The position numbers and the translations under genes are program-made. Shown here one piece after another: positions 26,420 to 46,257 of a stretch of 64,000 bases of DNA (its first letter is position 1; each line of letters opens with the position of its first letter). Below the pieces are notes generated by a model. That model saw only the letters and a program-made list of their open reading frames with translations. It searched no databases and was not told the DNA's origin. The stretch is from assembly GCA_950097015.1 (NCBI GenBank), contig CATNEN010000030.1:2542001-2606000 (forward strand), written 5' to 3'. The stretch comes from Macrostomum hystrix. Its lineage: Eukaryota; Animalia; Platyhelminthes.

Positions 26420-29400
26420 TCAGAAGAACGCCGCGTGCTGCTGCGCCACCATCTGCAGCAGGGTGTTATGCGATTGCCGCATCAACTTCCGATTGGCTAC
26501 ATCGATCCAGGCGATCCGCTCGCCGCTGCCGGCTTCTCGCAGGCTCTCCGTGAGCACATCGTCCTGGAAGTTGTAATTGAAGTGCTCGTGCAGATTTAGC
26601 AGGCTGGTCTCCAGCCAGGCGCAGTCACCGTTGACACGGTCGTTCAGCATTCCGGAGTAAACGAGGCTGAAAGTGGCCGCCGTGACCGCCTCCTGCTGGA
26701 TGTGCAGCCGCTTGGCGCTCAGCCGGCTAGCGTCAAGAGCATCGATGCGATCCCGCAGCCAGGCGCGCAGCACATTCTGCAGGGCGCACTGGCCGGATGA
26801 GCCGTCGCCTGCCGATGAAGCCGACGATGAAGCCGATGTGGATGCAGCGGAGATGCAGGTCGGCAGATTGTGCTTCACGTGGAACCAGGGCAGCTGCATG
26901 CCACCGCGCCTGTCTAGCACGGCTGCCGCTTGCAGAACCGGCCGGCCGGCCTTCTTGGCGATGTTCTGGCGATCGTCTCGTTTCCAGCGGGTCACGGCCA
27001 GGTGCACACAGTGGTTCGGGCCCCACAGGGGCAGTCGGCCCCGGTCCGGGACTCCAGCACTGCCACAGGGGTTCAGCGGACGTCCATCATTATCTAGCTG
27101 GTAGCTGCAAGTGGAAGTGAGGAGTGAGATGGGTGTGGAGTGAGGCGGGTGTAGAGTGAGGTGGGTGTGGAGTGAGTTGTATTTGGAGTGAGGTGGGTGT
27201 GGAGTGAGTTGTATTTGGAGTGAGGTGGGTGTGGAGTGAGTTGTTTCTGGAGTAGGGTCGATGTGGAGTGAGTTAGGTGTGAAGTGAAATTCTTTAGACA
27301 TTGATGCTACACAGTCTAATATGATTGGCAGCTGAAGCTCAGGGGTTGGCAAAGACAAATAACAGCCTTACCGTCCAGCGCAGGAGCCTCTGTGAAAGCC
27401 GGCGGCCGTATCAAATCCATTAAAGCCTCCCGCAGCGATGTTGTCCTCTTTATCCGGCCACTCTGTGCTGCGCCACGTGACTGGCCCCTCGGCCGATGCG
27501 TCCAGCTGGTAGGGCACCAGCCTAGCCATCTGGTGATGCTGGAGCCGGCACAGCCAGACCCGCGGCCGCTGCTCCTCCTCGGTGGAGTCGTCGCTGCCCA
27601 GATGGACACTGAAATCGTCGTCTGCAGGACTGGATCGTCTGGCAGCGTCAGCCAATTGCAGACGCTGGCCGCGAGAGCCGCCAGACAGGGTCATGGCCTG
27701 GCGGCGGTTGCGCTCATCCGACTGCTCGTACTGGTGCTGAATTATCGTCACCATCTGGGCGAGTTTAACGGCATGTACGAAGGACTTTGTGTAACCAGGC
27801 TTTGCACAGAGACACAGAGAATGCGGAGAGACAGAAGACCCACCTGGACAGAGTGGAAGCTTGATAGAAGACCCAACTGGGCAGTGTGGACGCTTGACAG
27901 AAGACCCAACTGGGCAGAGTGGAAGCTTGATAGAAGACCCAACTGGGCAGTGTGGACGCTTGACAGAAGACCCAACTGGGCAGAGTGGACGCTTGACAGA
28001 AGACCCAACTGGGCAGTGTGGACGCTTGACAGAAGACCCACCTGGACAGAGTGGAAGCTTGATAGAAGACCCAACTGGGCAGTGTGGACGCTTGACAGAA
28101 GACCCAACTGGGCAGAGTGGACGCTTGATAGAAGACCCAACTGGGCAGAGTGGACGCTTGATAGAAAACCCAAATAAGTAATATGGCTAGTCTTCCAGCA
28201 CTAATCATTGAAAGTTCACATATTGTTGAACAGAAAGTTACAACATAGGAATAATCGACCTCATAGTGCTTCTCTCCCATAGACTTGGCCAGGTTGGCAA
28301 CCATCTCGGTAAGCTCCTCGAGCCGGCGTTCCACGTTGTCGATTCGTTTGACATTCACCTCGACCTCGCGAATCGAGTCGCGAAACAGATCGCCCAGGCC
28401 CTCCTGCACCGAGTCAAGCTCCTTCTTCATGTTGGCTGCGTTGCCCCCGACCCCCCCTGCGCGCACAATGGTCCTTGTGTCCGACTTGCGCTTACGCTTC
28501 GGGTCGTCCAGGCCCCGGAGGAACTCAACGGCGCGAATGTGCTCCCACTGCATCAGCTGGCGCTCGCGCTGCTTGTTGCCTGAGTAGCTGCGCTCTGCAA
28601 TGGGCGAAACACTGAAATGATTCGTTAGAAAGCTAGACTTTGGTTTAACTACTAAACTACTAACTACTCAACTAAGATATTTTGCGGCGTGACAGTCGGA
28701 GGAAAAACTCGCCACCTACAAGCTCAACCCGAGTACTCCGCTCGCTAGATTCTTATCGAGCTTGAGACCGATATTAGACTTTCCTAATGATTCGGTATTA
28801 GATTCACACGAGGCACTCACTGAATGGACCATTTTCAAATACTCGATTGCCGCGACAGCGTTGCACCAGAACGTACAGGACAAAGACCAGGTGCCAAACT
28901 ATGATGAGAGGCGGCGCAATGGGACTTCGCTCGGTGTACTCTCGCATGATCATGTACCGCTGCAGGGTCCAGTGCTGGGTGCTGGAGCTTTGAATCTCCT
29001 CGTAGGTGTGCCTGTGGTTGGTGTGATGTCAAATTCGCACTAAGCAACAAGAAACACAGGAACAAACTAAATTGAACGATAGTATTTTCGCAGTCATATC
29101 GCCAATAGAACTCACGAAAAGGTGGCAATGAGCAGGTTCAGTAGCAGCACATTTGTCAGCACAATGTGAACACCGAGCAGGATGGGCGCGAGCCATTTTC
29201 CCCAGATGTCCGGGCAGCCGATGCTGTTTGTCTTGCAATTGTCGCCTTTTAGAGAAAAAAGTAAAAAAAAACTTGATACCAAAGTAGTGGGGTGAGTGGC
29301 AGAGCGGTTAACGCGTTTGCCACTGGCAACAAGGTCCCTGAGCTCGCCGAGAGAAGGCTTGGGGGCTTGTCGTGCAATTTACGCCCCTGAGGGCCAACCT

Positions 29401-32400
29401 CCAAGGCACAGTGAGAGTGTACACTGCTTGACAATGAGAAAGTCAGGGCAGATGTATACACCTATTCGAGCGTGTACCTACGTACAGTGTCTGTGTGCGT
29501 GTGTGCTCAGGAGTCAGTGAAATGGGTAGAATTGCCTCCTCGCTGGCTGCGGGTCTAGTGTCACCAAATGATGTGCCAGGTGTTCTGCGGCCCTCATGCA
29601 ATTACTATTGTTATTGATGCCAAAAAGTTAAAAATGTATTTTTGTTTATGCATTCAAAATTGGCTTCGCGCGTACATTGACACCAGAATGCACTCACTCA
29701 AGGTTGACACTGAAAAAAAGTGATTGGATGAAAATTCCACGTCAGTCAGCATGTTCCACTTAAGACAATATTCTGGCAGTTTAGCACCTGAGCACACTCA
29801 CCGTCTCCGGCCATCAAGTCAACTTTTAGTTCGCCAAACACCTGAAAGTAGGACGTCTTCATGATGTTGATGATCTCGCTCATCGCCTCAGCCACTGAGA
29901 GACTGCTCTTCGGAAACAGTATGCTGGACCACATGATGCCGTAGGCCAGAATGAATAGCAGGAATATTACCAGGAATGGCAGAAGGTCTTTCACGATCTG
30001 TGTGGGTTAAATTTCAGGTCTTTTCAAGTAGCCCGCGATCATTGTTTTGAATGGCACTGGGTCTTTGTAAAATGTGCTTTTGGGGGTCTGATTCAACGAG
30101 TTTTCAGAATTTTCTTGTTTTATCGGAAGAGGTTTCCGATTTTTTCTTAGTTCTGACTTCTGAGTAGTTTCCAACAGTTGGTTCTGAGTAGTTTTCTGGG
30201 GGTTGTTTTGAGTAGTTTTCTGTGATTTTTCTGAGTAGTTTTCTGGGCTTCTTTTTGAGTAGTTTTCAGGATTTCTTTTTGAGTAGTTTTCTGGATTTCT
30301 TTTTGAGTAGTTTTCTGGGTTTCTTTTTGAGTAGTTTTCTGGGGGTTGTTTTGAGTAGTTTTCTGGGATTTTTCTGAGTAGTTTTCTGGGCTTCTTTTTG
30401 AGTAGTTTTCTAGTTTCTTTTTGAGTAGTTTTCTGGGTTTCTTTTTGAGTAGTTTTCTGGGTTTCTTATTGAGTAGTTTTCTGGGTTTCTTTTTGAGTAG
30501 TTATCTGGGCTTCTTTTTGAGTAGTTTTCTAGTTTTTTTTAGTAGTTTTCTGGGTTTCTTTTTGGGTAGTTTTCTGGATTTCTTTTTGAGTAGTTTTCTG
30601 GATTTCTTTTTGAGTAGTTTTCTGGATTTCTTTTTGAGTAGTTTTCTGGGTTTCTTTTTTGAGTAGTTTTCTGGATTTCTTTTTGAGTAGTTTTCTGGAT
30701 TTCTTTTTTGAGTAGTTTTCTGGATTTCTTTTTGAGTAGTTTTCTGGGTTTCTTTTTGAGTAGTTTTCTGGGTTTCTTGTTGAGTAGTTTTCTGGGTTTC
30801 TCTTTGAGTAGTTTTCTGGGCTTCTTTTTGAGTAGTTTTCTGGGTTTCTTTTTGAGCAGTTTTCTGGGCTTCTTTTTGAGTAGTTTTCTGGGTTTCTTTT
30901 TGAGTAGTTTTCTGGATTTCTTTTTGAGTAGTTTTCTGGGTTTCTTGTTGAGTAGTTTTCTGGGTTTATTTTTGAGTAGTTTTCTGGGTTTTTTTTGAGT
31001 AGTTTTCTGGGTTTCTTGTTGAGTAGTTTTCTGGGTTTCTTTTTGAGTAGTTTTCTGGGTTTCTTGTTGAGTAGTTTTCTGGGTTTATTTTTGAGTAGTT
31101 TTCTGGGTTTTTTTTGAGTAGTTTTCTGGGTTTCTTGTTGATTAGTTTTCTAGGTTTCTTTTTGAGTAGTTTTCTGGGTTTCTTGTTGAGTAGTTTTCTG
31201 GGTTTCTCTTTGAGTAGTTTTCTGGGCTTCTTTTTGAGTAGTTTTCTGGGTTTCTTTTTGAGCAGTTTTCTGGGTTTCTTTTTGAGTAGTTTTCTGGGTT
31301 TCTTTTTGAGTAGTTTTCTGGATTTCTTTTTGAGTAGTTTTCTGGGTTTCTTTTTGAGTAGTTTTCTGGATTTATTTTTTGAGTAGTTTTCTGGATTTCT
31401 TTTTTGAGTAGTTTTCTGGATTTCTTTTTTGAGTAGTTTTCTGGGTTTCTTTTTTGAGTAGTTTTCTGGGTTTCTTTTTTGAGTAGTTTTCTGGATTTCT
31501 TTTTGAGTAGTTTTCTGGATTTCTTTTTGAGTAGTTTTCTGGGTTTCTTGTTGAGTAGTTTTCTGGGTTTCTTATTGAGTAGTTTTTGGGAGGTTCTTTT
31601 GAGTACTTTTCTGGGTTGTTGTGAGGAGTTTTCTGGGTCTTTCTGAGTAGTTTTTGGGGTTGCTTTTGTGTAGTTTTTGTGAAGTTTTAAAGCAAAAATT
31701 GTTCAAGATACAGAGCCTGAATAATAAATCGAACCATGTGTGACGCATGGGGCTTCAAACCTCACTCACCATATTTTGAATCATGACCACCTTGGGTCCC
31801 AGGCTGACGTGAATGGAGAACACCTGCAGAATGCGGATGTAAAATATGAACAGCGCGATGCACAGGCAGATTCTGCTCAGACGAATCAGCGTCTCCTTCG
31901 CGTTCTTCAGCGCCGCGGCGTCGGTGCCCGTGAGGAACAGCTCCTGCACCAGACTGTCCATTGAGCGCATGATGAAGAAGCAGCTGCCAATGAGGAACAG
32001 GGCTATGGCCACAATGTCCATCACATTCCACATGTCCGACACGTACGACCGAAACGAGGTGCCCGACAGTGCAGCCTGGCGGATCTCCTCCAGGCCGAGG
32101 GACACGACCCACACTAGCAGCAGCAGGTGGATCACCGACCAGTTGTCGATGCCGTTGTCAAACAGAAACAGCATCACGTAAGAGTAGATGCCCAGGAAGA
32201 TCAGGTAGGCCAGCTGGGAAAATTGAACAATTTGAGAATTTTGACAATCTCTAGAACATTGAGCGAGTACAAGTAACGACATTTGCTTGCCGAAGTGTGC
32301 TTTCAAATCGAAAACAAGCGTATTATTAATTAAGCATGCCAAGCCTTCACTGTTTGGATTTGGTAGTCCACTTGCACTGAGCAGATTCGCATTGAGGATT

Positions 32401-35400
32401 GAAAGTTCCGTGAAGGTAGAAGCGACATTCCTGCAAGCAGACTTCGGCAAGCAAATTTCTCGCAAGAAAGTTTCATAGAAACCTTCTGCTATCCTTTCTA
32501 GGTTTTAATCTTCTGTCTTATAGTCTATAGGTTACCTCGTCAGTTAACCTACCTCGTAACCCACGCTTAGTACATTAATTTTTCATCAACTAGTGATTCC
32601 TTCAAGTCCTCTTAACTGAACTAATTGAAAGTTCTTTATCCTAATTAAGTAAAGCTTTAAATAATCCTTGCCTCTGGTGCTTAATATGAAAATTAATAGT
32701 TTGCCGAATCAATTTTCTGTAAACATACTACTCACAGTAGAGTAGATAAACCGCACAACCGGAGCGAAGTAAAAGTCCAGAATGCGCGTAGCGAACTCTT
32801 TTGGTGCCAGACAGCGGCAGCGGCGCCTTCTGGAAATGCATTCACATTCACTGTTGCCCTATGCGGAACTGCTTAACTAAAAGCTATTAGCAGAGCGGTC
32901 AACTCGTCTGCCTTTCGTACCAAGGTCCCTGAGGCAGAGACGATGAGAGTAAGGGCAGCCCAGTTGTCTCAGATCGCCTCACCTGACCACCGGCAGCCGG
33001 TCTCCGGTCTCCGGGTCCACTTTGTTAGTCTTGAAGTTGGGCCTAATCGCCGCGGTGCTCTTGCGTCGGTTTCCAAAGGAGCTGACGCCGCTGACGCCGC
33101 TGCCGCCGCCAACCAGAGCCAATGCATTGTTTGATGCATCGGGGTGGCCCGCCGGTCCCGCCTCGTCCCGATCGTCGGCGTTGTACTTGATCACCAACGC
33201 CAGGAGCGGTGGGCACACGAGGCCGCAGCCGAGACCGCAGAAAAACTGCAGAATGAGACGGGGCGGGTCAGAGAGTGTTGGGATTTTGTTAGTTCTTAAA
33301 TCCCAGATAAGACGAGATTGCTTCCGCTCACCCTTAGCGCCCCATTCTTCTTAGTTGACAGGTTGCCCTTCCAGATGAGGTCCAGCATCTCCTGGCAGCA
33401 GCGGTGCGAGATGAACTTGATGGAGCCGCCCTCGGCCGCCAGCACAAAGCAGGTGCTCTGGCCATAGAAGGGCAGCTCGCGGACCAGGTTCTCCTGCGTG
33501 TTGCTCTGGTTGTCCCGGTAGCACTCCTCGAGTACACCCTCAGCGCGGGCCTCGAACGCGCTGGAAGATTTTAATTGAGATTGGCTACTATTAGTACTAT
33601 CTTGCAGATGCAAAAGTAGGAGACCTCTTTTGAGAACAGGAGTTCATGGTGTACCGCAGAAAGCGCATCCATAATTTTATCTCACAAACTAGATGTACGC
33701 CTAAATATGCACCATTTTTATCGACCGTCTACGGAGAATTTCACAATGTTTATTCTAGTAAAACTGAACACTGTTATGAGATTATTAAATAGCGCTTCAG
33801 AAGGCTGTGTACAGTGTACAGTGTACAGTGTACATTGTACTGTGTACTGTGTACTGTGTAATGTGTACTGAAGAGGCCGCGACACATCCAAACAATTTTT
33901 TGCCCAGGTGATGCTAATACCCATAGCTAGGTAGAATAAAGCACTAGGGAATGAAGCGCCTTGCTCAAGGACTCAAATTGCTCAAAATGGGTATCCTAAT
34001 CCCTCATCTATTCTCCCTCACTTTGCCAGCGCCTCCAGTTGCTCCTTCTCCGTCAGGTCGTCGCTGAACGCCCTCGCCTCCCTCAGCAGCATGGCCGCGA
34101 AGAGCGCCCCGGCGATGCACTCCTTCTCCAGGCTCCAGAAGAACTCTGCCAGAACTGTTCTCTGCGTCAGCAGCGACCACGTGAACAAGTCCAGAACGGG
34201 CCGCTCCATGCAGGCTGGGCTGCTCGAGTCTGTCTCCGGGTGAGTAGGGTTTCACAGTTTTGAGCTAAGCTAATGATGGCATAAAGTTCCATTTGGAAGG
34301 CATCTTCTTCCAAAAGCCGTCTGCAACCAATTTCTTAAAGTTGCCTCACCATAATATTTTAGTCTTAGTCGAATCTCACCTCCACCAAGGTCTTGGTCAC
34401 ACCTGCCCCCTTCTAGAGTCTTGGCCGCACCCCATCCCCCTCCTAGAGTCTTGGCCGCACCCCATCCCCCTCCTAGAGTCTTGGCCGCACCCCATCCCCC
34501 TCCTAGAGTCTTGGCTGCACCCCACCCCCCTCCTAGAGTCTTGGCCGCACCCCACCCCTCAAAAGTCTTGGCCGCACCCCACCCCTCAAAAGTCTTGGCC
34601 GCATCCCACCCCTCAAAAGTCTTGGCCGCACCCCACCCCTCAAAAGTCTTGGCCGCACCCCACCCCTCAAAAGTCTTGGCCGCACCTCACCCCTCAAAAG
34701 TCTTGGCCGCACCCCACCCCTCAAAAGTCTTGGCCGCACCCCACCCCTCAAAAGTATTGTTCGCACGCACTAACCAGAGTTCCTCCTATCCATCTCGTTG
34801 GCGCTGAATTTCACGTAAGATGAATTTCTAAAGCCTAATCCGTGTTGACTTTTTTGAGAATCTGAAATGATTTAATTCGAATTCGTAAGAAATACGTCGA
34901 AATTTTCCTTATTCTGCTTAACTAAAAGTACTCTTGTATAACTTAATCCAATAGCTTCTCGTAGTTCTCACTTCCAATCCTAAATTCCTTTTGAAACTCT
35001 TTGCTTAAGTAGAATGGCTTGTAGAATGAGCCCATCATGTGGAGCAGTACTCTGCCGATGTCTTCCAAACTGACGCGATTGACTCCCTGCGGAATATAGA
35101 ATTTCGCATAGATTTATGGAAGTAATTTCCGTGCTAAAATGGTACAAATTCCGTAAAAAAATAATTAGTTTTTTACCGTCTTGCCAACAGCAGCCTGCAA
35201 TCCGTTTCTAAGAATCCCGACAGTTTGAAACTGAAATCATTGATTTATGAAAAGAACTAATTTATCTGCTAGATCTGCCTCCAATCACCATGAGATTACC
35301 TACAACCACCTTAAAATTACATGCAATCTCCCTAAAAGTACCTAAAATTACCTAAATCTCGTTAATATTACCTTCAATCTCCCTAAGATAACCTTCAATC

Positions 35401-38400
35401 TCCCAGAGATTACCTGCAACCACCTTATAATTACCTACAATCACACAGAGATTACCTACAATCACGCAGAGATTACCTACAACCACTCTGAGATTACCTA
35501 CAATCACTCTGCGATTACCTACAATCACTCTGCGATTGCCTACAATCACTCTGCGATTGCCTACAATCACTCTGCGATTGCCTAGAGTCTCTCAGAGATT
35601 ACCTACAACCACTCTGAGATTACCTTCAATCACTCTGAGATTACCTACAACCACTCTGAGATTACCTTCAATCACTCTGAGATTACCTACAATCACTCTG
35701 AGATTACCTACAATCACTCTGCGATTGCCTACAATCACTCTGAGATTACCTACAATCACTCTGCGATTGCCTACAATCACTCTGAGATTACCTACAATCA
35801 CTCTGAGATTACCTACAATCACTCTGCGATTGCCTACAATCACTCTGCGATTGCCTACAATCACTCTGAGATTACCTACAATCACTCTGCGATTGCCTAC
35901 AATCACTCTGAGATTACCTACAATCACTCTGCGATTGCCTACAATCACTCTGAGATTACCTACAATCACTCTGAGATTACCTACAATCACTCTGAGATTA
36001 CCTACAATCACTCTGAGATTACCTACAATCACTCTGCGATTACCTACAACCACTCTGAGATTACCTACAATCACTCTGCGATTGCCTACAATCACTCTGA
36101 GATTACCTACAATCACTCTGAGATTGCCTACAATCACTCTGAGATTACCTACAATCACTCTGCGATTGCCTACAATCACTCTGAGATTACCTACAATCAC
36201 TCTGAGATTACCTACAATCACTCTGCGATTGCCTACAATCACTCTGCGATTGCCTATAATCACTCTGAGATTACCTACAATCACTCTGCGATTGCCTACA
36301 ATCACTCTGAGATTACCTACAATCACTCTGCGATTGCCTACAATCACTCTGCGATTGCCTAGAGTCTCTCAGAGATTACCTACAACCACTCTGAGATTAC
36401 CTTCAATCACTCTGAGATTACCTACAACCACTCTGAGATTACCTTCAATCACTCTGAGATTACCTACAATCACTCTGAGATTACCTACAATCACTTTGCG
36501 ATTGCCTACAATCACTCTGAGATTACCTACAATCACTCTGCGATTGCCTACAATCACTCTGCGATTGCCTACAATCACTCTGCGATTGCCTACAATCACT
36601 CTGAGATTACCTACAATCACTCTGAGATTACCTACAATCACTCTGCGATTGCCTACAATCACTCTGCGATTGCCTACAATCACTCTGAGATTACCTACAA
36701 TCACTCTGCGATTGCCTACAATCACTCTGAGATTACCTACAATCACTCTGCGATTGCCTACAATCACTCTGAGATTACCTACAATCACTCTGAGATTACC
36801 TACAATCACTCTGAGATTACCTACAATCACTCTGAGATTACCTACAATCACTCTGCGATTACCTACAACCACTCTGAGATTACCTACAATCACTCTGCGA
36901 TTACCTACAACCACTCTGAGATTACCTACAACCACTCTGAGATTACCTACAATCACTCTGCGATTGCCTACAATCACTCTGAGATTACCTTCAATCACTC
37001 TGAGATTACCTACAATCACTCTGAGATTACCTACAATCACTCTGAGATTACCTACAATCACTCTGCGATTACCTACAACCACTCTGAGATTACCTACAAT
37101 CACTCTGCGATTACCTACAACCACTCTGAGATTACCTACAACCACTCTGAGATTACCTACAATCACTCTGCGATTGCCTACAATCACTCTGAGATTACCT
37201 ACAATCACTCTGAGATTACCTACAATCACTCTGCGATTGCCTACAATCACTCTGCGATTGCCTACAATCACTCTGAGATTACCTACAATCACTCTGCGAT
37301 TGCCTTCAATCACTCTGCGATTGCCTACAATCACTCTGCGATTGCCTACAATCACTCTGAGATTACCTACAATCACTCTGAGATTACCTACAATCACTCT
37401 GCGATTGCCTACAATCACTCTGAGATTACCTACAATCACTCTGAGATTACCTACAATCACTCTGCGATTGCCTAGAGTCTCTCAGAGATTATCTACAAAC
37501 TCCTAGAGATGATGATGTTCTTATCCTAAAATATGCCACAGATAGGGGCCAGCGCAAGGGGTTGCTAGACCCACCCCAGTCATGACGTCCTCAGTGTAAA
37601 GATCCTCTAGCAGCTGGATGGTGACGAACTGCTCCAGACTGAAGCCCTGTTGCACGAACAGCTTGACGAAGGCCACCTTGTTGTCCCGCAGGGCCTCGCG
37701 CATGAATGCGTCCAGGTCGCCTTTGCGCCACTTTTTGTTTTCGCCGAACACCTTCTGGCGGGCCACGTCGCTGCGGTCCAACGCCAGGGCGATCTTCAGC
37801 TGGGCCTTGTTGAATCTCTCCGACTCTTCGTGACTGTCTACGCCGGCCGAGTTCAACAGCGAGGCCAGAATCTTGGCGTCCAAGTCTGTTGGCGCGTCCT
37901 CGTCAAGTGAGAAGATCTCGATGCACTGCTTTCTACGAAGGATCTCAATTAGGGCGGCCACCTCTTTGTCCAGGTCGGTGCCCAGCGGCAGAGTCCAGAT
38001 GTCCAGCATGAGATTGCGCAGCCGGTTGAACTCAAGGATGTCCTGCTCGCGCTCCAAGTTTTTCTTCTTCTTGTGCTTGGCACCTTCCACCTCCAGCAGC
38101 TCCTCAATCAGAACTGCGAGAAGGTCGGCCAAGCCGCCGGTGCCCTTGATCAGCACAAGAGGGACTTCGTTGCGGCACAGACTGGCGTGGACACCCTTCA
38201 GGGCATGCCGACCGCCGCCGGAGAGCAGGCCGCAGATGGGCACCGCGCCTGCCGTTCGTTGTGGAGGTGTGGTGCTGTCAAAAACTTGACTTCCGATGCT
38301 TAGATTCTCAAAGTTCATAGCTCGTATCTCCAAAGCTCAGATCCCAATGCTCAGATCCCAATGCTTAGATCCTCAAAGCTTAGATTCCCAAAGCTCAGAT

Positions 38401-41400
38401 ACTCAAAGCTCAGATCCTCAAAGCTCAGATCCTCAAAGCTTAAGATTCCCAAAGCTCAGATCCCCAATGCTCAGATCCCCAATGCTTAGATCCTCAAAGC
38501 TTAGATTCCCAAAGCTCATATCCCCAATGCTCAGATCCCCAATGCTCAGATCCTCAAAGCTCAGATCCTCAAAGCTCAGATCCTCAAAGCTCAGATCCCC
38601 AAAGCTCAGATCCTCAAAGCTTAGATCCTCAAAGCTCAGATCCCCAATGCTCAGATCCCCAATGCTCAGATCCTCAAAGCTCAGATCCCCAAAGCTTAGA
38701 TCCTCAAAGCTCAGATCCCCAATGCTTAGATCCTCAAAGCTCAGATCCCCAAAGCATAGATCCCCAAAGCTCAGATCCTCAAAGCTCAGTTCCCCAAAGC
38801 TTAGATCCTCAGAGCTCAGATCCCCAAAGCATAGATCCCCAAAGCTCTGATCCCCAAAGCTCAGATCCTCAGAGCTCAGATCCCCAAAGCATAGATCCTC
38901 AAAGCTCAGATCCCCAAAGCTAAGATCCCCAAAGCTAAGATCCTCAAAGCTCAGATCCCTAAAGCTCAGGTCCCAAATTCTCTGATCCCCAAGTCCCAAA
39001 CAAGAGTCGAACCATCAAGATAAGCCGAGCTGCCAGCCCTATCAGGCCCACTCGCCGCTGACCACTCCTTCACCAGCAGTTCGAATCGGCTGCGAAACAT
39101 TCTGGCGTCGTCTACGGCTGCGTCGCCATAGCGACCTGAGTCCGGCAGTAGAAAGTGCGAATGATTGTGATCAAGGCTGATGCTGGAGCTGCCGCCATCA
39201 CTCTCCATGGCATACTTGGCTGGGTAGCAACCCTAGATGAGGCGTTTGGATGGGAATTCCTTGGCGTTACGTCATTATGAATCGAAGGATTCAGTAATTT
39301 ATATATGCACAACTATTTTGGTTTTTATAGAGGTGAGGGGCAGAGCGGCCTAACGCGTTTGTCTCTCTCACCAAAGTACCTGAGCTCGATTCCACGGTGA
39401 GGCCACCCTCATCATTTGGGGTGCAGCCGCGGAGAGAAGGCTTGGAGGCTTGTCGTGCAATTTACACCCTTGAGGGCCAACCTCCAAGGTACAGTGAGAG
39501 TGTAATCTGCCTGACAATGAGAAATTCAGTGCAGATGTACACACCTGTGTGAGCATGCGCCTGAGGGGGCGAGTGGGTCAGCGGCTAACGTCGCTGCCTC
39601 GCACTCCAAAGGACGCTAGTTCGATTCACCCTTCAAGTCACGATTAATTTCGGGACTTGTTGGGGGGTTTGGACAGTAGCGACCGGCGGAGGTGCACCAT
39701 ATTTCGTGCAATCAAAGCTGGAAATAATAGCTTCGCTCCTACCTTCTGGGTGCCTGTTCTGCGTTGTGTGAGTTGTGTGCGTTGGTGCTGGGGCGTGAGG
39801 CCTTGCGGGGGGTGGCTGGAGGGCGGGTGTACACCGCCGCGCGCTTTCTGGACTTCCGTCAGCGCGATTGGATAAGTGTACACTCATCACCCGGCCCCCC
39901 TGAGGACTGATTTCTTATCAGGCTTGGTCTGCTATGTGCGTGTGGGGCTGGGGTGGGGGACACTGCTGCCTATTCTGGGTGCCTCCTGCCCTCCCCGGCT
40001 GGTCTGTGCTGCTGTGTGTGGTGCCTGCTCAGGGGAGGCGGCGCGATGGGCGCAAAAGCGCCTAGTTCGCCGGTCTGGGGGCGTGCCGCTCCGTCGCTTG
40101 TGCGACAAGTGCCCCGGGCCCCCCTGCAAATAGATAGAGATAGAGTATGCGCCTGTGTACAGTTTCTGAGTGCGTGTGCTCAGGAGTCAGCGAAATGGGC
40201 AGAATTGCCTTCTCGCTGGCTGCAGGTCTAGTGTCACCAAACGATGTGCCATTGCCTGCAGCCCTCCTGAAATTATTAGCTCGTATTATTTAATGTTTAT
40301 TTTATATTTTGGATTTCATATTTCAACCTTCAAGGGTCTCTCCCCCGCCCCCGGCTCACCAAATAGGTTTCAGAGGCCAGGCTAGACCGATTGGCCACGC
40401 GGCCCCAGGGGCTCACGCCGATGGCCAGGATGGAGTCTTCGCCGTAGGCGTCGCAATAGTCACGGACGGCCTGGCCGGACAGCTCGGACAGACCATCGTA
40501 GCCGTCAGTCACGACCCAGGCGCCTGTATGACCAGTTTTGTGTCATAAAAAGCTATGTCTTTGTGTATCTATGACCAGTCGTGTATCTATGACCAGTCGT
40601 GTATCTATGACCAGTCGTGTATCTATGACCAGTCGTGTATCTATGACCAGTCGTGTATCTATGACCAGTCGTGTATCTATGACCAGTCGTGTATCTATGA
40701 CCAGTCGTGTATCTATGACCAGTCGTGTATCTATGACCAGTCGTGTATCTATGACCAGTCGTGTATCTATGACCAGTCGTGTATCTATGACCAGTCGTGT
40801 ATCTATGACCAGTTGTTTGCCAGCTTCTGTGTTGTCGCTTATGACCAATTCTTGTGCCTCTGGTGAGCTAGTGCTTTATGATCAGACTTGAAATGTGAGG
40901 TCATTATTGTATGACCTCTGTAATTTCGTGTCTAATATCCATCTGCTGCTAATTTTATATACTTTACTAGCGAAAATCACGCTTTTTGCTTTCTAAAACT
41001 CCTGTCGACTTACCAGAACCTCCGGCCGCCTTCCAGAGACCCTTCTGCCAGACGCTCTTGAATGTGGTCTTATCAATCTCCGTGCCGTAGACGCTGATGA
41101 TCAGGGATGGCTTGCCGAGGCCCCAGTGGCCTGTTAGCAGAGACATCAGGGCTTCATCCGTGGCGTTCTGACTGACTCGGTAGTACTGGAATGACCAATT
41201 TATCGCATATCACAGCCATAGATAAAAAATCAAAATTACACTTATCAATATATCAAAAACATTTCTCACCTGAGCAGTGTTTCCCAGACCGGAGAACTCG
41301 ACCTCGCCGAAGCAGTTATTCACCAGTTCGACTGTGTCGCCATCGCGACTCCAGGTGTGCCGACTGGGCAGCGCTGTGGTAAGGAGTTCGTGACCATCGG

Positions 41401-44400
41401 CCGGCTGACCACACGGGCACACGGGTGAGGCCGAGCCGTTGCTAGGGTTATGGAACGTTATGGAAATAAACTGGTGTTCTGCTGACTGAATCACGAGTTT
41501 AAAAGATTGAACAATACTGTCAATGGTCAGCTTCTTTGTTTCTAACTATAGTTACTAATTTGCTGAACTTATAAGAAAAAAGCTAAATAGCACATTTTTG
41601 AAGACAAGATAGAAAATTGCTTTACATACTCAAAGCTGGCCTCAAGCAGCGGCTGCTCAGGCATCCGGTAGGTGCACACCTTGCGCATCAGGCGCAGCTG
41701 CACCGGCATCTGAGCGATCAGGGTGCCAGACTCCGCATCCACCAGCTGCTTCAGCAGGGCAGCTGCAGAATTCGCGTTGCGACTGTCCTCTGAACTGTTG
41801 TAGTCATCCAGATAATCCAGTGCCGTCTTGCCCTCCTAGACGAGTGACAATCAAAATTGCATAAGCAACTCGAGACTCGAGAGCCAACACTCATCGAGAC
41901 TCAAGAATCTATATTCATCCAGACACGAGAACCTATATTCATCCAGACACGAGAACCTATATTCATCCAGACACGAGAACCAATATTCATCCAGACACGA
42001 GAACCAATATTCATCCAGACACGAGAACCTATATTCATCCAGACACGAGAACCTATATTCATCCAGACACGAGAACCTATATTCATCCAGACACGAGAAC
42101 CTATATTCATCGAGACACGAGAACCAATATTCATCCAGACACGAGAACCAATATTCATCCAGACACGAGAACCTATATTCATCGAGACTCGAGAACCAAT
42201 ATTCATCCAGACACGAGAACCTATATTCATCCAGACACGAGAACCTATATTCATCGAGACACGAGAACCTATATTCATCGAGACACGAGAACCTATATTC
42301 ATCCAGACACGAGAACCTATATTCATCCAGACACAAGAACCTATATTCATCCAGACACGAGAACCAATATTCATCGAGACACAAGAACCTATATTCATCC
42401 AGACACAAGAACCAATATTCATCCAGACACAAGAACCTATATTCATCCAGACACGAGAACCAATATTCATCCAGACACGAGAACCTATATTCATCCAGAC
42501 ACGAGAACCTATATTCATCCAGACACAAGAACCAATATTCATCCAGACACGAGAACCTATATTCATCCAGACACGAGAACCAATATTCATCCAGACACGA
42601 GAACCTATATTCATCCAGACACGAGAACCTATATTCATCCAGACACGAGAACCAATATTCATCCAGACACGAGAACCTATATTCATCCAGACACGAGAAC
42701 CTATATTCATCGAGACACGAGAACCAATATTCATCCAGACACGAGAACCTATATTCATCCAGACACGAGAACCTATATTCATCGAGACACGAGAACCAAT
42801 ATTCATCCAGACACGAGAACCAATATTCATCCAGACACGAGAACCTATATTCATCCAGACACGAGAACCAATATTCATCCAGACACGAGAACCTATATTC
42901 ATCCAGACACGAGAACCAATATTCATCCAGACACGAGAACCAATATTCATCCAGACACGAGAACCTATATTCATCCAGACACGAGAACCAATATTCATCC
43001 AGACACGAGAACCTATATTCATCCAGACACGAGAACCAATATTCATCCAGACACGAGAACCTATATTCATCCAGACACGAGAACCTATATTCATCCAGAC
43101 ACGAGAACCTATATTCATCCAGACACGAGAACCAATATTCATCCAGACACGAGAACCAATATTCATCCAGACACGAGAACCTATATTCATCCAGACACGA
43201 GAACCTATATTCATCCAGACACGAGAACCAATATTCATCCAGACACGAGAACCAATATTCATCCAGACACGAGAACCAATATTCATCGAGACACGAGAAC
43301 CAATATTCATCGAGACTCGAGAATCTATATTCATCCAGACACGAGAGCCTATATTCATCCAGACACGAGAACCTATATTCATCGAGACACGAGAACCTAT
43401 ATTCATCGAGACACGAGAACCTATATTCATCCAGACACGAGAACCTATATTCATCCAGACACGAGAACCTATATTCATCCAGACACGAGAACCTATATTC
43501 ATCCAGACACAAGAACCTATATTCATCCAGACACAAGAACCAATATTCATCCAGACACGAGAACCTATATTCATCCAGACACAAGAACCTATATTCATCC
43601 AGACACGAGAACCTATATTCATCCAGACACGAGAACCAATATTCATCCAGACACGAGAACCAATATTCATCCAGACACGAGAACCAATATTCATCGAGAC
43701 ACGAGAACCAATATTCATCGAGACTCGAGAATCTATATTCATCCAGACACGAGAGCCTATATTCATCCAGACACGAGAACCTATATTTATCGAGACACGA
43801 GAACCTATATTCATCGAGACACGAGAACCTATATTCATCCAGACACGAGAACCTATATTCATCCAGACACGAGAACCTATATTCATCCAGACACGAGAAC
43901 CTATATTCATCCAGACACAAGAACCTATATTCATCCAGACACAAGAACCAATATTCATCCAGACACAAGAACCTATATTCATCCAGACACAAGAACCTAT
44001 ATTCATCCAGACACAAGAACCTATATTCATCCAGACACGCGAACTAATATTCATCCAGACACGAGAACCTATATTCATCGAGACTCGAGAACTAATATTC
44101 ATCGAGACTCGAGAACCAATATTCATCGAGACACGAGAACCAATATTCATCGAGACACGAGAACCAATATTCATCCAGACACGAGAACCTATATTCATCG
44201 AGACACGAGAACCTATATTCATCGAGACACGAGAACCTATATTCATCCAGACACGAGAACCTATATTCATCCAGACACGAGAACCTATATTCATCCAGAC
44301 ACAAGAACCTATATTCATCCAGACACGAGAACCAATATTCATCCAGACACGAGAACCAATATATTCATCCAGAAACGAGAACCAATATTCATCCAGACAC

Positions 44401-46257
44401 GAGAACCAATATTCATCCAGACACGAGAACCTATATTCATCCAGACACGAGAACCTATATTCATCCAGACACGAGAACCAATATTCATCCAGACACGAGA
44501 ACCAATATTCATCCAGACACGAGAACCAATATTCATCGAGACACGAGAACCAATATTCATCGAGACTCGAGAGCCAACACTCATCGAGACTCAAGAATCT
44601 ATATTCATCCAGACACGAGAGCCTATATTCATCCAGACACGAGAACCTATATTCATCGAGACACGAGAACCTATATTCATCGAGACACGAGAACCTATAT
44701 TCATCCAGACACGAGAACCAATATTCATCCAGACACGAGAACCTATATTCATCGAGACACGAGAACCAATATTCATCCAGACACGAGAACCAATATTCAT
44801 CCAGACACGAGAACCTATATTCATCCAGACACGAGAACCAATATTCATCCAGACACGCGAACTAATATTCATCCAGACACGAGAACCTATATTCATCGAG
44901 ACTCGAGAACCAATATTCATCGAGACACGAGAACCAATATTCATCGAGACACGAGAACCAATATTCATCCAGACACGAGAACCTATATTCATCGAGACAC
45001 GAGAACCTATATTCATCGAGACACGAGAACCTATATTCATCCAGACACAAGAACCTATATTCATCCAGACACGAGAACCAATATTCATCCAGACACAAGA
45101 ACCTATATTCATCCAGACACGAGAACCAATATTCATCCAGACACGAGAACCAATATATTCATCCAGACACGAGAACCAATATTCATCCAGACACGAGAAC
45201 CAATATTCATCGAGACAAATGAAAGGCAATTAGATCTCTCGACCTCTTACCAGATCAGGCAAGTCAAGCGGCGGCAGCACAGGCTCTTCTGGCATCCTGA
45301 GACCGCCAGCGGCATCGAAGCAGCCAACAGAGACGAGCTCTGCAAGGCAGGCGCTGCTGCCTGTTGCCAGGGCCCAGAGCAGCGGTGTTCGACCGTGCGA
45401 CCTGTCGGCTGTGACCCGGCTGGCCGGCCTGGTTGCAGGGCCCAACAGGCGTACAGATACCGGGTCACTGGTGCGACAGGCCAGGTGAAGCGGGAACTGG
45501 CCAGACTGGGAAAAAGCATGGGGGCATGGCTTTATTGTTGGCTTTACGAATCAAGAGTCAACACACTCAAGTTTTATCGAGAAATCACGAGGTCTTAACC
45601 GACGAAGGGAATATCAACAAAAAGATTTAATGATCGACGAAAGGCGAATGGAAGGGAAAAGCGGTGAAACTAAATTCGATCGTACGGGCTCGTATATATT
45701 AGTCCTCATTAGATCAAGGTTCACGAAAAGTCCTTGAGTCGTGGGGGTATGTTTAGCTGCGGGTTCAAGCAAAGCACAAGCGACGTAGTAGTCACAATGT
45801 ACGCCCCTTGTCACTGTCTTAAAAATTTAAATCTTAAAATTTCTACCTCGTCCACCTGGTTTGCGAACTGTTCGTCCCGATCTAGCAGCCTTCGCATCAC
45901 GTGGTAGCTTCGCGTAATCACCGTCGCATGCATCAGAGGGCAGCTTTCCAGCACCGTTGGGATGTTCGCTAGTTCAGCGTCATTGGTTCCCGCCAACCGG
46001 ATGCGCTCATCCTCGGTCAGCTCCAGACGGTAGACCGCATCATTCGGAGACAACTGTTCCTGCTCCGCAATTCCGCTTTCGACGTCTCCACGAAGCAGGC
46101 TGCCAATGTCTACTTGCTCCGATACCATCTTGACAGTCTTCCTGGCGGAAGGTAATGCAGCTGTTGAAGATGCTGGCGATTGCGTTCCCGCAGCGTTTTT
46201 ATTGACGCTCTCACTCAGCTCCAGGCTGTCGGTAAGACGAGTCTTGGAGGAGTTCAT
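26420..46257 (-). CDS. TRPM: TRPM2-like cation channel with N-terminal ankyrin repeats, MHR1-4, 6 TM, TRP box, coiled coil and NUDT9-H (~1,870 aa, ~21 exons)
   Basis: Exons (minus): 46257-45847, 45505-45251, 41835-41630, 41441-41270 (CPCGQ..GH), 41185-41014 (WGLGKPSLIISVYG), 40523-40360 (GAWVVTDG..AIGVSPWG), 39232-~39000 (LDHNHSHFLL; donor uncertain), ~38290-37575, 35230-35177, 35086-34972, 34229-34022 (LFTWSLL..FFW), 33560-33332, 33245-32983, 32829-32736 (DFYFAPVVRF), 32213-31770 (S1-S4, EEIRQ, WNVMD, LGPKVVMI), 29997-29802 (S5, YFQVFGEL), 29245-29116 (S6, NVLLLNLLIATF), 29011-28821 (WTLQRY), 28594-28260, 27754-27372, 27104-26420 (PLNPCG..GPNH..VTRWKR..AWLET). Phases match at all junctions except the one noted. 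Confidence 0.93.
27112..27290. repeat. Inverted, more diverged copy of the same 16-bp array (GTGGGTGTGGAGTGAG) in the last TRPM intron
   Basis: Reverse complement of the 26105-26360 unit. Confidence 0.85.
27830..28175. repeat. 33-bp minisatellite GACAGAAGACCCAACTGGGCAGTGTGGACGCTT
   Basis: Direct inspection. Confidence 0.93.
29289..29616 (+). mobile_element. SINE-A, near full length, in a TRPM intron
   Basis: GGGGTGAGTGGCAGAGCGGTTAACGCG head through the ATT tail. Confidence 0.9.
30130..31680. repeat. ~24-bp T-rich minisatellite TTTTTGAGTAGTTTTCTGGGTTTC
   Basis: Fills the TRPM S4/S5 intron. Confidence 0.96.
34400..34757. repeat. 27/30-bp minisatellite TTGGCCGCACCCCACCCCTCAAAAGTC
   Basis: Direct inspection. 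Confidence 0.94.
35280..37500. repeat. 21-bp minisatellite CTACAATCACTCTGAGATTAC with higher-order blocks
   Basis: The variant CCTAGAGTCTCTCAG recurs at 35581, 36358 and 37471. Confidence 0.97.
38295..38995. repeat. 15-bp minisatellite AGATCCYCAAAGCTC
   Basis: Direct inspection. Confidence 0.95.
39335..40290 (+). mobile_element. SINE-A split by a nested insertion (39335-39563 and 40143-40290)
   Basis: The 5' and 3' halves of the consensus flank a 579-bp insert. Confidence 0.88.
39564..40142 (+). mobile_element. Longer tRNA-headed SINE (family C) with 13-bp TSD
   Basis: A-box-like TGGGTCAGCGG, B-box GTTCGATTC, 3' CCCCTGCAAATAGATAGAG tail. TSD GAG(C/T)ATGCGCCTG at 39551-39563 and 40143-40155. 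Confidence 0.8.
40560..40812. repeat. 18-bp perfect array GTGTATCTATGACCAGTC
   Basis: About 14 identical units. Confidence 0.96.
41630..46257 (-). CDS. Ankyrin-repeat N-terminal exons of the TRPM gene
   Basis: CPLMHATVITRSYHVMRRLL; DE|SGQFPLHLACRTSDPVSVRLL; HGRTPLLWALATGSSACLAELV; DL|EGKTALDYL. These fit the ankyrin G-x-T-P-L-H-x-A consensus, giving 3-4 repeats. Confidence 0.8.
41865..45215. repeat. 24-bp minisatellite ACGAGAACCWATATTCATCSAGAC filling a 3.4-kb intron
   Basis: About 140 units. Confidence 0.98.

What the first reader, a model, noticed from the sequence alone, without database searches (positions are those of the whole stretch)
26420..46257. TRPM2-type channel fused to an N-terminal ankyrin-repeat domain (ANK-MHR-TM-NUDT9H)
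Seen: three 5' exons encode 3-4 ankyrin repeats (SGQFPLHLAC, GRTPLLWALATG, EGKTALDY). Exon 41835-41630 carries the last ankyrin motif and splices in phase, with no stop, into the MHR1 exon (CPCG..GH..W..FGEVEF). The gene ends in a NUDT9-H domain. Known: canonical TRPMs lack ankyrin repeats, which characterise TRPA/N/V/C. Inference: a chimeric sensory channel adding a TRPA/TRPN-like module to an ADPR/Ca2+-gated TRPM2 scaffold. From memory, some TRPS/soromelastatin sequences also carry ankyrins, so phylogeny must decide novelty. If the host is a flatworm, the link to the praziquantel-target TRPM clade is also worth testing.
Basis: partly seen in the sequence, partly recalled or inferred. Interest (0 to 1): 0.8.

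Follow-up and report, generated by a model that had tools for sequence, protein, structure and literature searches.

The report
Flatworm TRPM2-like channel with ankyrin head
This is an intact 22-exon flatworm (Macrostomum) gene for a TRPM2-like ion channel that really does carry four ankyrin repeats in front of the usual TRPM sensor domain, a layout shared by relatives in Schistosoma and liver flukes that sits unremarked in public databases.

Summary
On the minus strand, 46257 to 26420, lies a 22-exon gene: 1,895 codons, no internal stop, every intron GT-AG. It encodes ankyrin repeats, the TRPM SLOG/MHR1-4 region, six transmembrane helices with a TRP helix, and a NUDT9-homology domain whose Nudix box is lost.

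No RNA run was listed for this window, so the ankyrin-to-TRPM join rests on comparison:
- A transcript-derived Macrostomum lignano protein (PAA68780.1, 1,889 aa) is collinear with the whole gene and has the same intron positions and phases.
- Exon 3 encodes both the fourth ankyrin repeat and the first TRPM strand.
- The ankyrin exons are under purifying selection.
- Two more M. lignano paralog groups and models from Clonorchis, Opisthorchis and Schistosoma have the same ANK+SLOG layout.

On a tree these form one flatworm clade, with a single change of ankyrin state. Its sister is an ankyrin-free flatworm clade that also carries NUDT9H.

The gene is not TRPS. It is not TRPM_MCLZ-like, because it keeps SLOG. 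No link to the TRPM_PZQ clade could be shown. ADPR gating is doubtful, since two of three MHR1/2 contact residues are changed.

The earlier ankyrin-TRPM findings of this scan concern the different, SLOG-less type. I judge this a lineage-specific variant of a known kind, present in databases but not described in the papers searched.

The parts
45847..46257 (-). Exon 1 (aa 1-137). It holds the start codon, a poorly conserved N-terminal tail with a conserved MNSS.TRLTDSLEL motif, and ankyrin repeat 1 (CPLMHATVITRSYHVMRRLLDRDEQFANQVDE).
   Evidence: First ATG after an in-frame stop; donor GAG|GTAGAA. Collinear with P0151 residues 1-138. Ank_2/Ank_4 begin at residue 109-110 of the ortholog. DNA conservation with the M. 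lignano locus starts 6 nt before the ATG.
45251..45505 (-). Exon 2 (aa 138-222): ankyrin repeats 2 and 3, then a variable loop ending in LPPLDLPDL.
   Evidence: Pfam Ank 25.4 bits (cut-off 21.1) and Ank_2 25.9 bits. PDB hits are NOMPC and designed ankyrin proteins. Acceptor CCCAG|TCT, donor CTG|GTAAGA, phase 0. dN/dS 0.39 against M. lignano.
41836..45250 (-). Intron 2 (3,415 nt), almost entirely a 24-bp minisatellite of about 139 copies.
   Evidence: Tandem Repeats Finder rows 41873-45217. The orthologous M. lignano intron is only about 600 nt.
41630..41835 (-). Exon 3 (aa 223-291), the junction exon. It encodes the fourth, capping ankyrin repeat (EGKTALDYL...AALLKQL), a linker helix, and the first TRPM strand (RKVCTYRMPE).
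   Evidence: An in-frame TAG overlaps the acceptor, so the exon cannot extend 5'. Donor GA|GTATGT, phase 2, identical in position and phase to M. lignano. In the ortholog's fold model this segment forms helices 135-143 and 152-161, then strand 179-183. dN/dS 0.57. No Pfam or PDB sequence hit on its own.
41270..41441 (-). Exon 4 (aa 291-348): Cys-rich TRPM N-terminus (SPVCPCGQPADGH ... NNCFGEVEFSGLGNTAQ).
   Evidence: The junction peptide ..LLEASF-D-NGSASPVCPCG matches P0151 ..LLEAGLDNGSTSPVCPCG. dN/dS 0.09.
41014..41185 (-). Exon 5: start of SLOG/MHR1 (YYRVSQ...ISVYGTE...).
   Evidence: Pfam LSDAT_euk 29.4 bits; splice model.
40360..40523 (-). Exon 6: SLOG/MHR1 (GAWVVTDGYDGLSELSGQAVRD...).
   Evidence: Pfam LSDAT_euk 37.4 bits.
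39013..39232 (-). Exon 7: SLOG/MHR1-2, holding the equivalents of hsTRPM2 Y295 (here Ala) and R302 (kept).
   Evidence: Alignment to 6mix residues 258-313.
37575..38248 (-). Exon 8: end of SLOG/MHR2 (GTGGLAD; the R358 equivalent is Gly) and start of MHR3 (TRPM2 domain).
   Evidence: Pfam LSDAT_euk plus TRPM2 domain. PDB hits are TRPM8/TRPM2, E 4e-19..
33332..35230 (-). Exons 9-13: MHR3/MHR4 (TRPM2-like domain). Coordinates are 35230-35177, 35086-34972, 34861-34775, 34229-34022 and 33560-33332.
   Evidence: Pfam PF25508 52.8 bits on the last of them. Splice junctions are guided by P0151, all GT-AG.
32736..33245 (-). Exons 14-15: variable pre-S1 linker and pre-S1/S1 start. Coordinates are 33245-32983 and 32829-32736. 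The exon 15 acceptor is ambiguous between 32829 and 32826.
31770..32213 (-). Exon 16: S1-S4 and the S4-S5 linker, with the TRPM Ca2+-site motifs LEEIRQ (S2) and DMWNVMD (S3).
   Evidence: PDB hits are TRPM5/TRPM2/TRPM4, E 1.5e-12, with alignment shown.
28821..29997 (-). Exons 17-19: S5, pore loop, S6 and TRP helix (WTLQRYMIMREYTERSP). Coordinates are 29997-29802, 29245-29116 and 29011-28821.
28260..28594 (-). Exon 20: post-TRP helices and coiled-coil region.
   Evidence: 93% identical to P0151.
26420..27754 (-). Exons 21-22 (27754-27372 and 27104-26420, including the stop codon): linker and NUDT9-homology domain with a degenerate Nudix box.
   Evidence: Human NUDT9 1q33 matches at E 3.4e-19 in two stretches, leaving the Nudix-box part (query 64-120) unaligned. 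TRPM2 NUDT9H of several species also matches. No Pfam NUDIX hit..

Best explanation
The locus is one intact gene of a Macrostomum flatworm. It encodes a 1,895-residue subunit of a TRPM2-like cation channel in which a four-repeat ankyrin domain is fused directly in front of the complete TRPM ligand-sensing region (SLOG/MHR1-2, MHR3-4). The six-helix channel, the TRP helix and a catalytically dead NUDT9-homology domain follow.

Shown here:
- The exon structure and the domains.
- Collinearity with a transcript-derived M. lignano protein.
- Conservation of the fusion across Macrostomum, flukes and schistosomes as a single clade.

Inferred:
- The subunit assembles as a tetramer like other TRPMs.
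- It is Ca2+-dependent, because the S2/S3 Ca2+-site motifs are kept.
- The ankyrin domain projects from the cytosolic ligand-sensing layer next to MHR1/2. It most likely serves as a docking or regulatory surface, not as a spring or an electrophile sensor.
- The activating ligand is uncertain. It may not be ADPR, because the Nudix box and two of three MHR1/2 ADPR contacts are changed.
For: Gene model:
- 22 exons, all GT-AG, 5,688 nt, no internal stop, 80.6% identical to PAA68780.1.
- tblastn of that 1,889-aa protein covers the window from 46257 to 26423 in order.
- The M. lignano locus has the same exon 1-4 boundaries and phases, and the same upstream TRAP-beta neighbour.
- That annotation derives from RNA-seq transcript assembly cut at spliced-leader and poly(A) sites (PMC5730564).

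Constraint on the ankyrin exons:
- Only exons, including ankyrin exon 2 and exon 3, align at DNA level between the two loci.
- dN/dS is 0.39 for exon 2 and 0.57 for exon 3.

Domains:
-.

Fold model of the ortholog's residues 95-600 (pLDDT 83.8, pTM 0.85):
- It shows four ankyrin helix pairs, the fourth from exon 3, followed by MHR1/2.
- Structural matches are the TRPM2 MHR1/2 crystal structure 7aov (Z 31.9) and IkB-alpha (Z 14.6 over model residues 9-162).

Same ANK+SLOG layout elsewhere:
- Mlig003066g1-3, Mlig009389g3, Clonorchis KAG5447154.1, Opisthorchis T265_14336 and S. mekongi MN116_003343.
- Their ankyrin modules align with each other.
- They form one clade with SH-aLRT 99, and the ankyrin state changes once on the tree.
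Against: - No RNA evidence exists for this window itself. No RNA run was listed, so no reads could be laid.
- Exons 1 and 3 give no ankyrin HMM hit on their own.
- Exon 3 has an in-frame Met (..AQMPVQ..). It could start an ankyrin-less isoform if a transcript began or was trans-spliced there. M. lignano trans-splices about 39% of its genes.
- The M. lignano copy g1 is annotated without the N-terminus, though that model starts in mid-exon.
- The fold model is of the ortholog, not of the window's own protein.
- All functional statements are inference.
Confidence: 0.85

Rival explanations
1. The gene makes both an ankyrin-bearing and an ankyrin-less channel. An internal promoter or a spliced-leader acceptor at exon 3 gives an mRNA that starts translation at the Met in exon 3 (MPVQLRLMRKVCTY...), so the ankyrin exons are alternative 5' exons. 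This does not exclude the main reading.
For: An in-frame Met lies just before the first TRPM strand in exon 3, and it is conserved in M. lignano. Trans-splicing is common in M. lignano. Some public models of the clade lack the N-terminus (S. japonicum P0015, Mlig025325g1).
Against: The 40 codons of exon 3 upstream of that Met are conserved as coding sequence and form an ankyrin repeat in the fold model. The truncated public models start in mid-domain and look like incomplete predictions.
Confidence: 0.2
2. Exons 1-2 are a separate small ankyrin-protein gene upstream of an ordinary TRPM gene, for example in one operon-like transcription unit. On this reading the fused protein models are annotation artefacts.
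For: If intron 2 is not spliced, exon 2 runs into a stop after six codons (VRGREI*), giving a possible 228-aa product. All three 5' junctions are phase-compatible, which happens by chance about one time in three per junction. No RNA run was listed for this window.
Against: Exon 3 itself carries the fourth ankyrin repeat together with the TRPM start, and it cannot be extended upstream. Intron positions and phases are identical in a locus with saturated or near-saturated synonymous divergence. The transcript-based M. lignano model is cut at spliced-leader and poly(A) sites and still joins them. Models deposited separately for flukes and schistosomes show the same fusion with homologous ankyrin modules.
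Confidence: 0.05
3. The copy in this window is a silent or decaying duplicate of the functional gene.
For: Macrostomum genomes carry many duplicates. The introns are swollen by minisatellites. No RNA run was listed.
Against: The reading frame of 1,895 codons is intact with 21 canonical introns. dN/dS is well below 1, at 0.09 in exon 4. Synteny with TRAP-beta is kept.
Confidence: 0.05

Closest known systems
Macrostomum lignano BOX15_Mlig025325g2 (PAA68780.1 / UniRef A0A267F4T8), annotated 'hypothetical protein'
   Same: It is collinear over the whole length, with 80.6% identity. Intron positions are the same where checked, and so is the upstream neighbour. The domain order is the same: Ank_2, LSDAT_euk, TRPM2 domain, Ion_trans, NUDT9H-like C-terminus.
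   Different: It is not the same locus. The ankyrin exons are only 53-61% identical and synonymous sites are near saturation. Intron 2 is 0.6 kb there and 3.4 kb here.
Flatworm 'nudix subclade' TRPM paralogs of parasites (Clonorchis KAG5447154.1 'TRPM2', Opisthorchis T265_14336, Schistosoma mekongi MN116_003343)
   Same: They share the ANK + SLOG + TRPM2 domain + channel + NUDT9H-like layout. Their ankyrin modules are homologous, and they fall in the same clade on the tree. The review PMC11731825 says that two schistosome TRPMs besides TRPM_PZQ carry a nudix domain.
   Different: They are about 25-30% identical in the N-terminal region. The review's text does not mention ankyrin repeats in these paralogs. 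Its Figure 1B could not be seen.
Vertebrate and cnidarian TRPM2 (hsTRPM2 6mix/6puo, drTRPM2 6drj/7aov, nvTRPM2 6co7)
   Same: The MHR1-4, channel, TRP helix, Ca2+-site motifs and C-terminal NUDT9H domain are shared. The best structural match of the ortholog's MHR1/2 is a TRPM2 domain at Z 31.9.
   Different: TRPM2 has no N-terminal ankyrin domain. Here the equivalents of Y295 and R358 of the MHR1/2 ADPR site are Ala and Gly, and the Nudix box is not recognisable.
TRPM_MCLZ (Smp_333650), the schistosome meclonazepam target, and the ankyrin-TRPM genes that this scan found elsewhere in the same genome
   Same: It is a flatworm TRPM-type channel with N-terminal ankyrin repeats.
   Different: TRPM_MCLZ lacks MHR1/2 (SLOG) and has no C-terminal enzyme domain (PMC11731825). 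The gene here keeps both. Its ankyrins are added to the TRPM sensor, not put in its place.
TRPM_PZQ (Smp_246790), the praziquantel target
   Same: It is a flatworm TRPM with MHR and NUDT9H.
   Different: No N-terminal ankyrin domain is described for it. No retrieved sequence fits the published spacing N1388/W1451/R1514/T1518/Q1673/D1677. The relationship is unresolved because TRPM_PZQ itself was not retrieved.
TRPA, TRPN (NOMPC), TRPV and TRPC channels
   Same: They have canonical ankyrin repeats at the N-terminus. NOMPC is the best PDB sequence hit of exon 2.
   Different: In those families the ankyrin domain (up to 29 repeats in NOMPC) leads into the pre-S1 region. Here four repeats lead into a SLOG domain, and the channel core is TRPM by every test.

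Membership tests
TRPM (melastatin) channels | N-terminal SLOG/MHR1-2 domain | tested here: met
   Pfam LSDAT_euk on three exons. The ortholog scores 119 bits. The fold model matches the TRPM2 MHR1/2 crystal structure at Z 31.9.
TRPM (melastatin) channels | MHR3/4 region, six-helix channel with pore loop, and TRP helix (W..QRY...EY) | tested here: met
   Pfam TRPM2 domain. PDB TRPM hits on the MHR3 and S1-S4 exons. The TRP helix reads WTLQRYMIMREY.
TRPM2-type (Ca2+ and ADPR gated, NUDT9H-bearing) channels | C-terminal NUDT9-homology domain | tested here: met
   The last exon matches human NUDT9 at E 3.4e-19 and TRPM2 NUDT9H domains at 1e-14 to 1e-8.
TRPM2-type (Ca2+ and ADPR gated, NUDT9H-bearing) channels | Transmembrane Ca2+ site (E and Q in S2, N and D in S3) | tested here: met
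   LEEIRQ and DMWNVMD align with the TRPM5/TRPM2 motifs. That these residues form the Ca2+ site rests on my own knowledge of TRPM2/4/5/8 structures.
TRPM2-type (Ca2+ and ADPR gated, NUDT9H-bearing) channels | MHR1/2 ADPR contacts (hsTRPM2 Y295, R302, R358; PMC6759353) | tested here: not met
   R302 is kept, Y295 aligns with Ala, and R358 aligns with Gly. Gly is shared by all flatworm clade A and B sequences except one, which has Lys. This weakens the claim of ADPR gating, not membership of the TRPM2-like clade.
Active Nudix hydrolases (NUDT9, 'chanzyme' TRPM2) | Nudix box GX5EX7REUXEEXGU | tested here: not met
   The box region (residues 64-120 of the last exon) does not align to NUDT9, and a Ser-rich insert sits there. 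Pfam NUDIX gives no hit.
Ankyrin repeat domain | Repeats recognised by the Pfam Ank models above threshold | tested here: met
   Exon 2: Ank 25.4 bits against 21.1. Ortholog: Ank_2 36.5 against 27.3, Ank_4 24.7 against 22.7.
Ankyrin repeat domain | Stacked helix-turn-helix repeat fold | tested here: met
   Tested on the ortholog only. It has four helix pairs, with IkB-alpha at Z 14.6 (rmsd 2.6 over 131 residues) and ANK1 AR1-5 at Z 14.5. The window's own joined protein was not folded.
TRPM_MCLZ-like ('TRPM-like') channels | Ankyrin repeats in place of MHR1/2 (SLOG), and no C-terminal enzyme domain | tested here: not met
   SLOG and NUDT9H are both present. The definition comes from PMC11731825.
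TRPM_PZQ orthologs | Published binding-pocket residues and their spacing (N/H/T in S1, R1514, T/S/I at +4, Q1673, D/E1677) | tested here: inconclusive
   No retrieved protein, including the S. mansoni member of the sister clade, fits the spacing. Four residues after the S4 Arg the window gene has Val, where the paper gives T, S or I. TRPM_PZQ itself was not retrieved, so no tree placement is possible.
TRPS (soromelastatin) | Placement with ced-11-like sequences, and the divergent TRP domain described by Himmel et al. | not tested
   No TRPS reference sequence was in hand. All nearest named relatives are 'TRPM member-like 2'. TRPS is reported to lack ankyrin repeats.

The most novel reading that the evidence does not exclude
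The ankyrin domain was gained once in an early flatworm. It gives this TRPM2-like lineage a gating or anchoring input that no other TRPM has, such as a partner protein or cytoskeletal tether acting on the MHR1/2 clamshell in place of ADPR. That would make the clade, including its orthologs in Schistosoma, Clonorchis and Opisthorchis, a functionally distinct and so far undescribed class of TRPM channel.
Probability: 0.25. Interest if true: 0.7.

Novelty: new variant of a known kind. Interest (0 to 1): 0.5.

Why it matters
Papers on TRP channel evolution state that TRPM is the one TRP family without canonical ankyrin repeats. The flatworm literature treats N-terminal ankyrins as a peculiarity of the SLOG-less TRPM_MCLZ group.

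This gene and its clade show that a canonical four-repeat ankyrin domain can sit in front of an intact SLOG sensor, and that the combination has been kept from Macrostomum to schistosomes. That is a clean natural case of domain gain on a ligand-sensing layer whose structure is well understood.

The parasite orthologs belong to the same small group of NUDT9H-bearing TRPMs as the praziquantel target, and they have no known ligand. The free-living Macrostomum genes offer a tractable system for asking what the added domain does.

Tried and rejected
1. RNA evidence. The look-up of sequencing runs (kind rna, 40300-46300) listed no run, so read laying was never used.
2. Pfam and PDB sequence searches of exon 1 and exon 3 alone found no ankyrin signal, even at E up to 10. 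The fourth repeat is seen only in the ortholog's fold model.
3. My first hand model of exon 3/4 (donor at 41626, acceptor at 41485 or 41470, all phase 0) was wrong.
4. A word search with the ortholog's ankyrin region returned only generic ankyrin proteins. It says nothing about TRPM relatives.
5. Identifying TRPM_PZQ:
- I first took the 2,100-2,340-aa sister clade for TRPM_PZQ on size and a Q-x3-D pattern.
- I rejected this because the published E/D position aligns with the conserved E before the aromatic residue.
- The S1 Asn/Thr (Schistosoma/Fasciola) difference and the S4-S5 T/S/I pattern are also absent, and no protein fits the published residue spacing.
- Two further word searches did not retrieve a protein named TRPM_PZQ.
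- The supplement of PMC9910428 is not held.
6. The first tree run timed out in MAFFT. The trees reported use a faster alignment and the 'quick' search with LG+G4, with SH-aLRT support only.
7. The separate-gene and pseudogene readings were considered and given low odds (see rivals).
Full report
WHAT IS THERE

The region 46257-26420 carries one gene on the minus strand. Stop-free segments and hand inspection of splice sites gave the first exons. The closest database protein then served as a guide for all junctions. The result is 22 exons with 21 GT-AG introns. The coding sequence is 5,688 nt (1,895 codons) and has no internal stop.

Exon 3 is 41835-41630 and ends in phase 2 at GA|GTATGT. Exon 4 starts at 41441, giving ...LLEASF-D-NGSASPVCPCG. 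My own first guess, an all-phase-0 model, was wrong and was corrected by the ortholog.

Many introns are filled with minisatellites. Intron 2 is 3.4 kb of a 24-bp unit repeated about 139 times.

I assembled the joined protein only inside a local script, to count length, stops and identity. Searches used single exons by reference, or the database ortholog.

DOMAINS

- Ankyrin, exon 2: Pfam Ank scores 25.4 bits against a cut-off of 21.1. The best PDB sequence hits are NOMPC and designed ankyrin proteins.
- Ankyrin, exons 1 and 3: neither gives an ankyrin hit on its own.
- SLOG: LSDAT_euk is found on exons 5, 6 and 8.
- MHR3/4: the TRPM2 domain (PF25508) is found on exons 8 and 13.
- MHR3 exon: it matches TRPM8 and TRPM2 structures at about 4e-19.
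- S1-S4 exon: it matches TRPM5, TRPM2 and TRPM4, and carries LEEIRQ and DMWNVMD. From my knowledge of TRPM2/4/5/8 structures these are the Ca2+-site motifs.
- NUDT9H: the last exon matches human NUDT9 (1q33) at 3.4e-19 in two stretches, with the Nudix-box part between them unaligned. That part holds a Ser-rich insert, and the catalytic REFGEE-type motif is not recognisable. The domain is at most a binding module.

IS THE ANKYRIN PART REALLY FUSED TO THE CHANNEL?

No RNA run was listed for the window, so the answer is comparative.

(a) The exhaustive protein search with the 271-aa MHR3 exon and cluster look-ups found Macrostomum lignano BOX15_Mlig025325g1/g2/g3. The g2 protein (PAA68780.1, 1,889 aa) covers the window gene from its first to its last codon, in order. 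Identity is 53-61% in exons 1-3 and 85-98% in the core, and 80.6% overall.

(b) Its genomic locus has the same upstream TRAP-beta gene as the window. It also has the same exon 1-4 boundaries and phases.

(c) According to Wudarski et al. 2017, the GenBank annotation of that assembly comes from a genome-guided RNA-seq transcript assembly. Its units were cut at spliced-leader and poly(A) sites (PMC5730564). The join therefore has transcript support in the sister locus.

(d) Between the two loci only exons align at DNA level, including ankyrin exon 2 and exon 3.
- Synonymous sites are near saturation.
- dN/dS is 0.39 for exon 2, 0.57 for exon 3 and 0.09 for exon 4.
- The ankyrin exons are therefore constrained coding sequence, though more loosely than the core.

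(e) Exon 3 is a physical link.
- An in-frame TAG overlaps its acceptor, so the exon cannot start a longer frame.
- Its first 40 codons are conserved.
- In the fold model of the ortholog (residues 95-600, mean pLDDT 83.8, pTM 0.85) those codons form a fourth helix pair.
- A linker helix and the first beta strand of MHR1 follow, encoded by the same exon.
- VIA-align matched model residues 165-498 to the TRPM2 MHR1/2 crystal structure 7aov (Z 31.9).
- It matched residues 9-162 to ankyrin domains: IkB-alpha at Z 14.6 (rmsd 2.6 over 131 residues) and ANK1 repeats 1-5 at Z 14.5.

(f) The same ANK+SLOG layout occurs in public models deposited separately:
- Mlig003066g1-3 (1,781-1,786 aa).
- Mlig009389g3 (1,457 aa).
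- Clonorchis sinensis KAG5447154.1.
- Opisthorchis viverrini T265_14336.
- Schistosoma mekongi MN116_003343.
- In each, Ank_2 scores above the Pfam cut-off.
- Their ankyrin modules align repeat by repeat.

PHYLOGENY

Quick maximum-likelihood trees (LG+G4, SH-aLRT support only, about 1,000 columns) place all flatworm hits in one clade (100), nested among 'TRPM member-like 2' proteins of other animals. The M. lignano ortholog stood in for the window gene.

That clade splits in two:
- An ankyrin-bearing clade (99). It holds three Macrostomum paralog groups plus fluke, schistosome and cestode members.
- An ankyrin-free sister clade (100). It is present in Macrostomum and in every neodermatan sampled.

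The ankyrin state changes once on the tree. Generic ankyrin-repeat proteins used as probes hit only the first clade among about 180 TRPM-family proteins held. Most members of both clades carry a NUDT9H-like C-terminus. This agrees with the 'nudix subclade' of schistosome TRPMs named in PMC11731825.

PRAZIQUANTEL QUESTION

The window gene is not demonstrably linked to TRPM_PZQ. I first suspected that the sister clade was TRPM_PZQ, because its members are 2,100-2,340 aa long. It does not fit what Rohr et al. report, for these reasons:
- The Asn/Thr (Schistosoma/Fasciola) difference in S1 is absent.
- The T/S/I pattern after the S4 Arg is absent.
- No protein held has the published spacing of N1388, W1451, R1514, T1518, Q1673 and D1677. 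This includes the S. mansoni member.

TRPM_PZQ itself was not retrieved, so its position relative to this clade stays open. An unchecked note of this scan places an 'NIE'-type TRPM on another piece of the genome.

HOW IT LIKELY WORKS

By homology the protein should form a tetrameric, Ca2+-dependent cation channel.

ADPR gating cannot be assumed. Huang et al. 2019 name three hsTRPM2 MHR1/2 contacts (PMC6759353):
- R302 is kept.
- Y295 aligns with Ala.
- R358 aligns with Gly, and the same holds for nearly all flatworm members of both clades.

The Nudix box is also gone.

The ankyrin domain has four repeats, too few for a NOMPC-like spring. It is attached to the N-terminus of MHR1/2. I infer a docking or regulatory surface on the ligand-sensing layer. 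This inference is not tested here.

COMPARISON WITH WHAT IS KNOWN

- Morini et al. 2026 discuss gains and losses of the kinase and NUDT9H domains, but no N-terminal ankyrin domain.
- The flatworm literature describes N-terminal ankyrins only for TRPM_MCLZ, which lacks SLOG and the enzyme domain.
- That literature says the other schistosome paralogs have the ancestral 'SLOG plus channel' layout.
- Figure 1B of PMC11731825 draws domain cartoons of all paralogs with an ankyrin colour key. I could not see it, so the fusion may be depicted there without comment.
- Earlier follow-ups of this scan on other pieces of the same genome dealt with the SLOG-less, TRPM_MCLZ-like type. This gene is a different architecture.

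VERDICT

It is a clade-wide, database-visible feature of flatworm TRPM2-like channels that the papers searched do not describe: a new variant of a known kind. Interest is moderate, and would be higher if the ankyrin domain proves to replace ADPR as the input.

Noticed in passing
window 51699-52076 (-): This is an exon of a translocon-associated protein beta (TRAP_beta, 75 bits) gene, upstream on the same strand. The same neighbour precedes the orthologous gene in M. lignano, so the region is syntenic.
   Followed up: partly
window 55087-57525 (+) and 61683-62366 (+): This is a terminal uridylyltransferase / non-canonical poly(A) polymerase gene (MTPAP-like palm, TUTase and PAP_assoc domains). 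Its two parts are separated by about 4 kb.
   Followed up: partly
window 59648-60364 (+) and 63419-64000 (-): Two inverted, near-identical copies of a Pif1-type helicase fragment (Pif1_2B domain) flank the second TUTase part. They look like remains of Helitron-like elements. The flanking stretches 60400-60771 (+) and 63011-63274 (-) repeat as well.
   Followed up: no
window 41873-45217, 35367-37498, 30185-31677, 38326-38992, 40563-40813, 27830-28173: Most large introns of the channel gene consist of long, very regular minisatellites (periods 15-33 bp, up to 139 copies, 85-100% matches). The orthologous M. lignano intron 2 is only about 600 nt.
   Followed up: partly
window 46206-46263 (-): The first 17 codons (MNSSKTRLTDSLELSES) and 6 nt before the ATG are conserved with M. 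lignano at 84% DNA identity, while the next 60 or so codons are not. This looks like a short conserved N-terminal motif of unknown role.
   Followed up: no
L001 and protein clusters: M. lignano holds three copies of the orthologous gene (g1-g3) that are about 99.5% identical to each other and about 80-90% identical to the window. The window is therefore another Macrostomum species or an old homeolog, not the DV1 locus.
   Followed up: partly
protein P0008 (Clonorchis KAG5451156.1): The public model of the sister-clade channel in Clonorchis begins with a vinculin C-terminal domain (222 bits). This is probably a mis-joined gene prediction.
   Followed up: no
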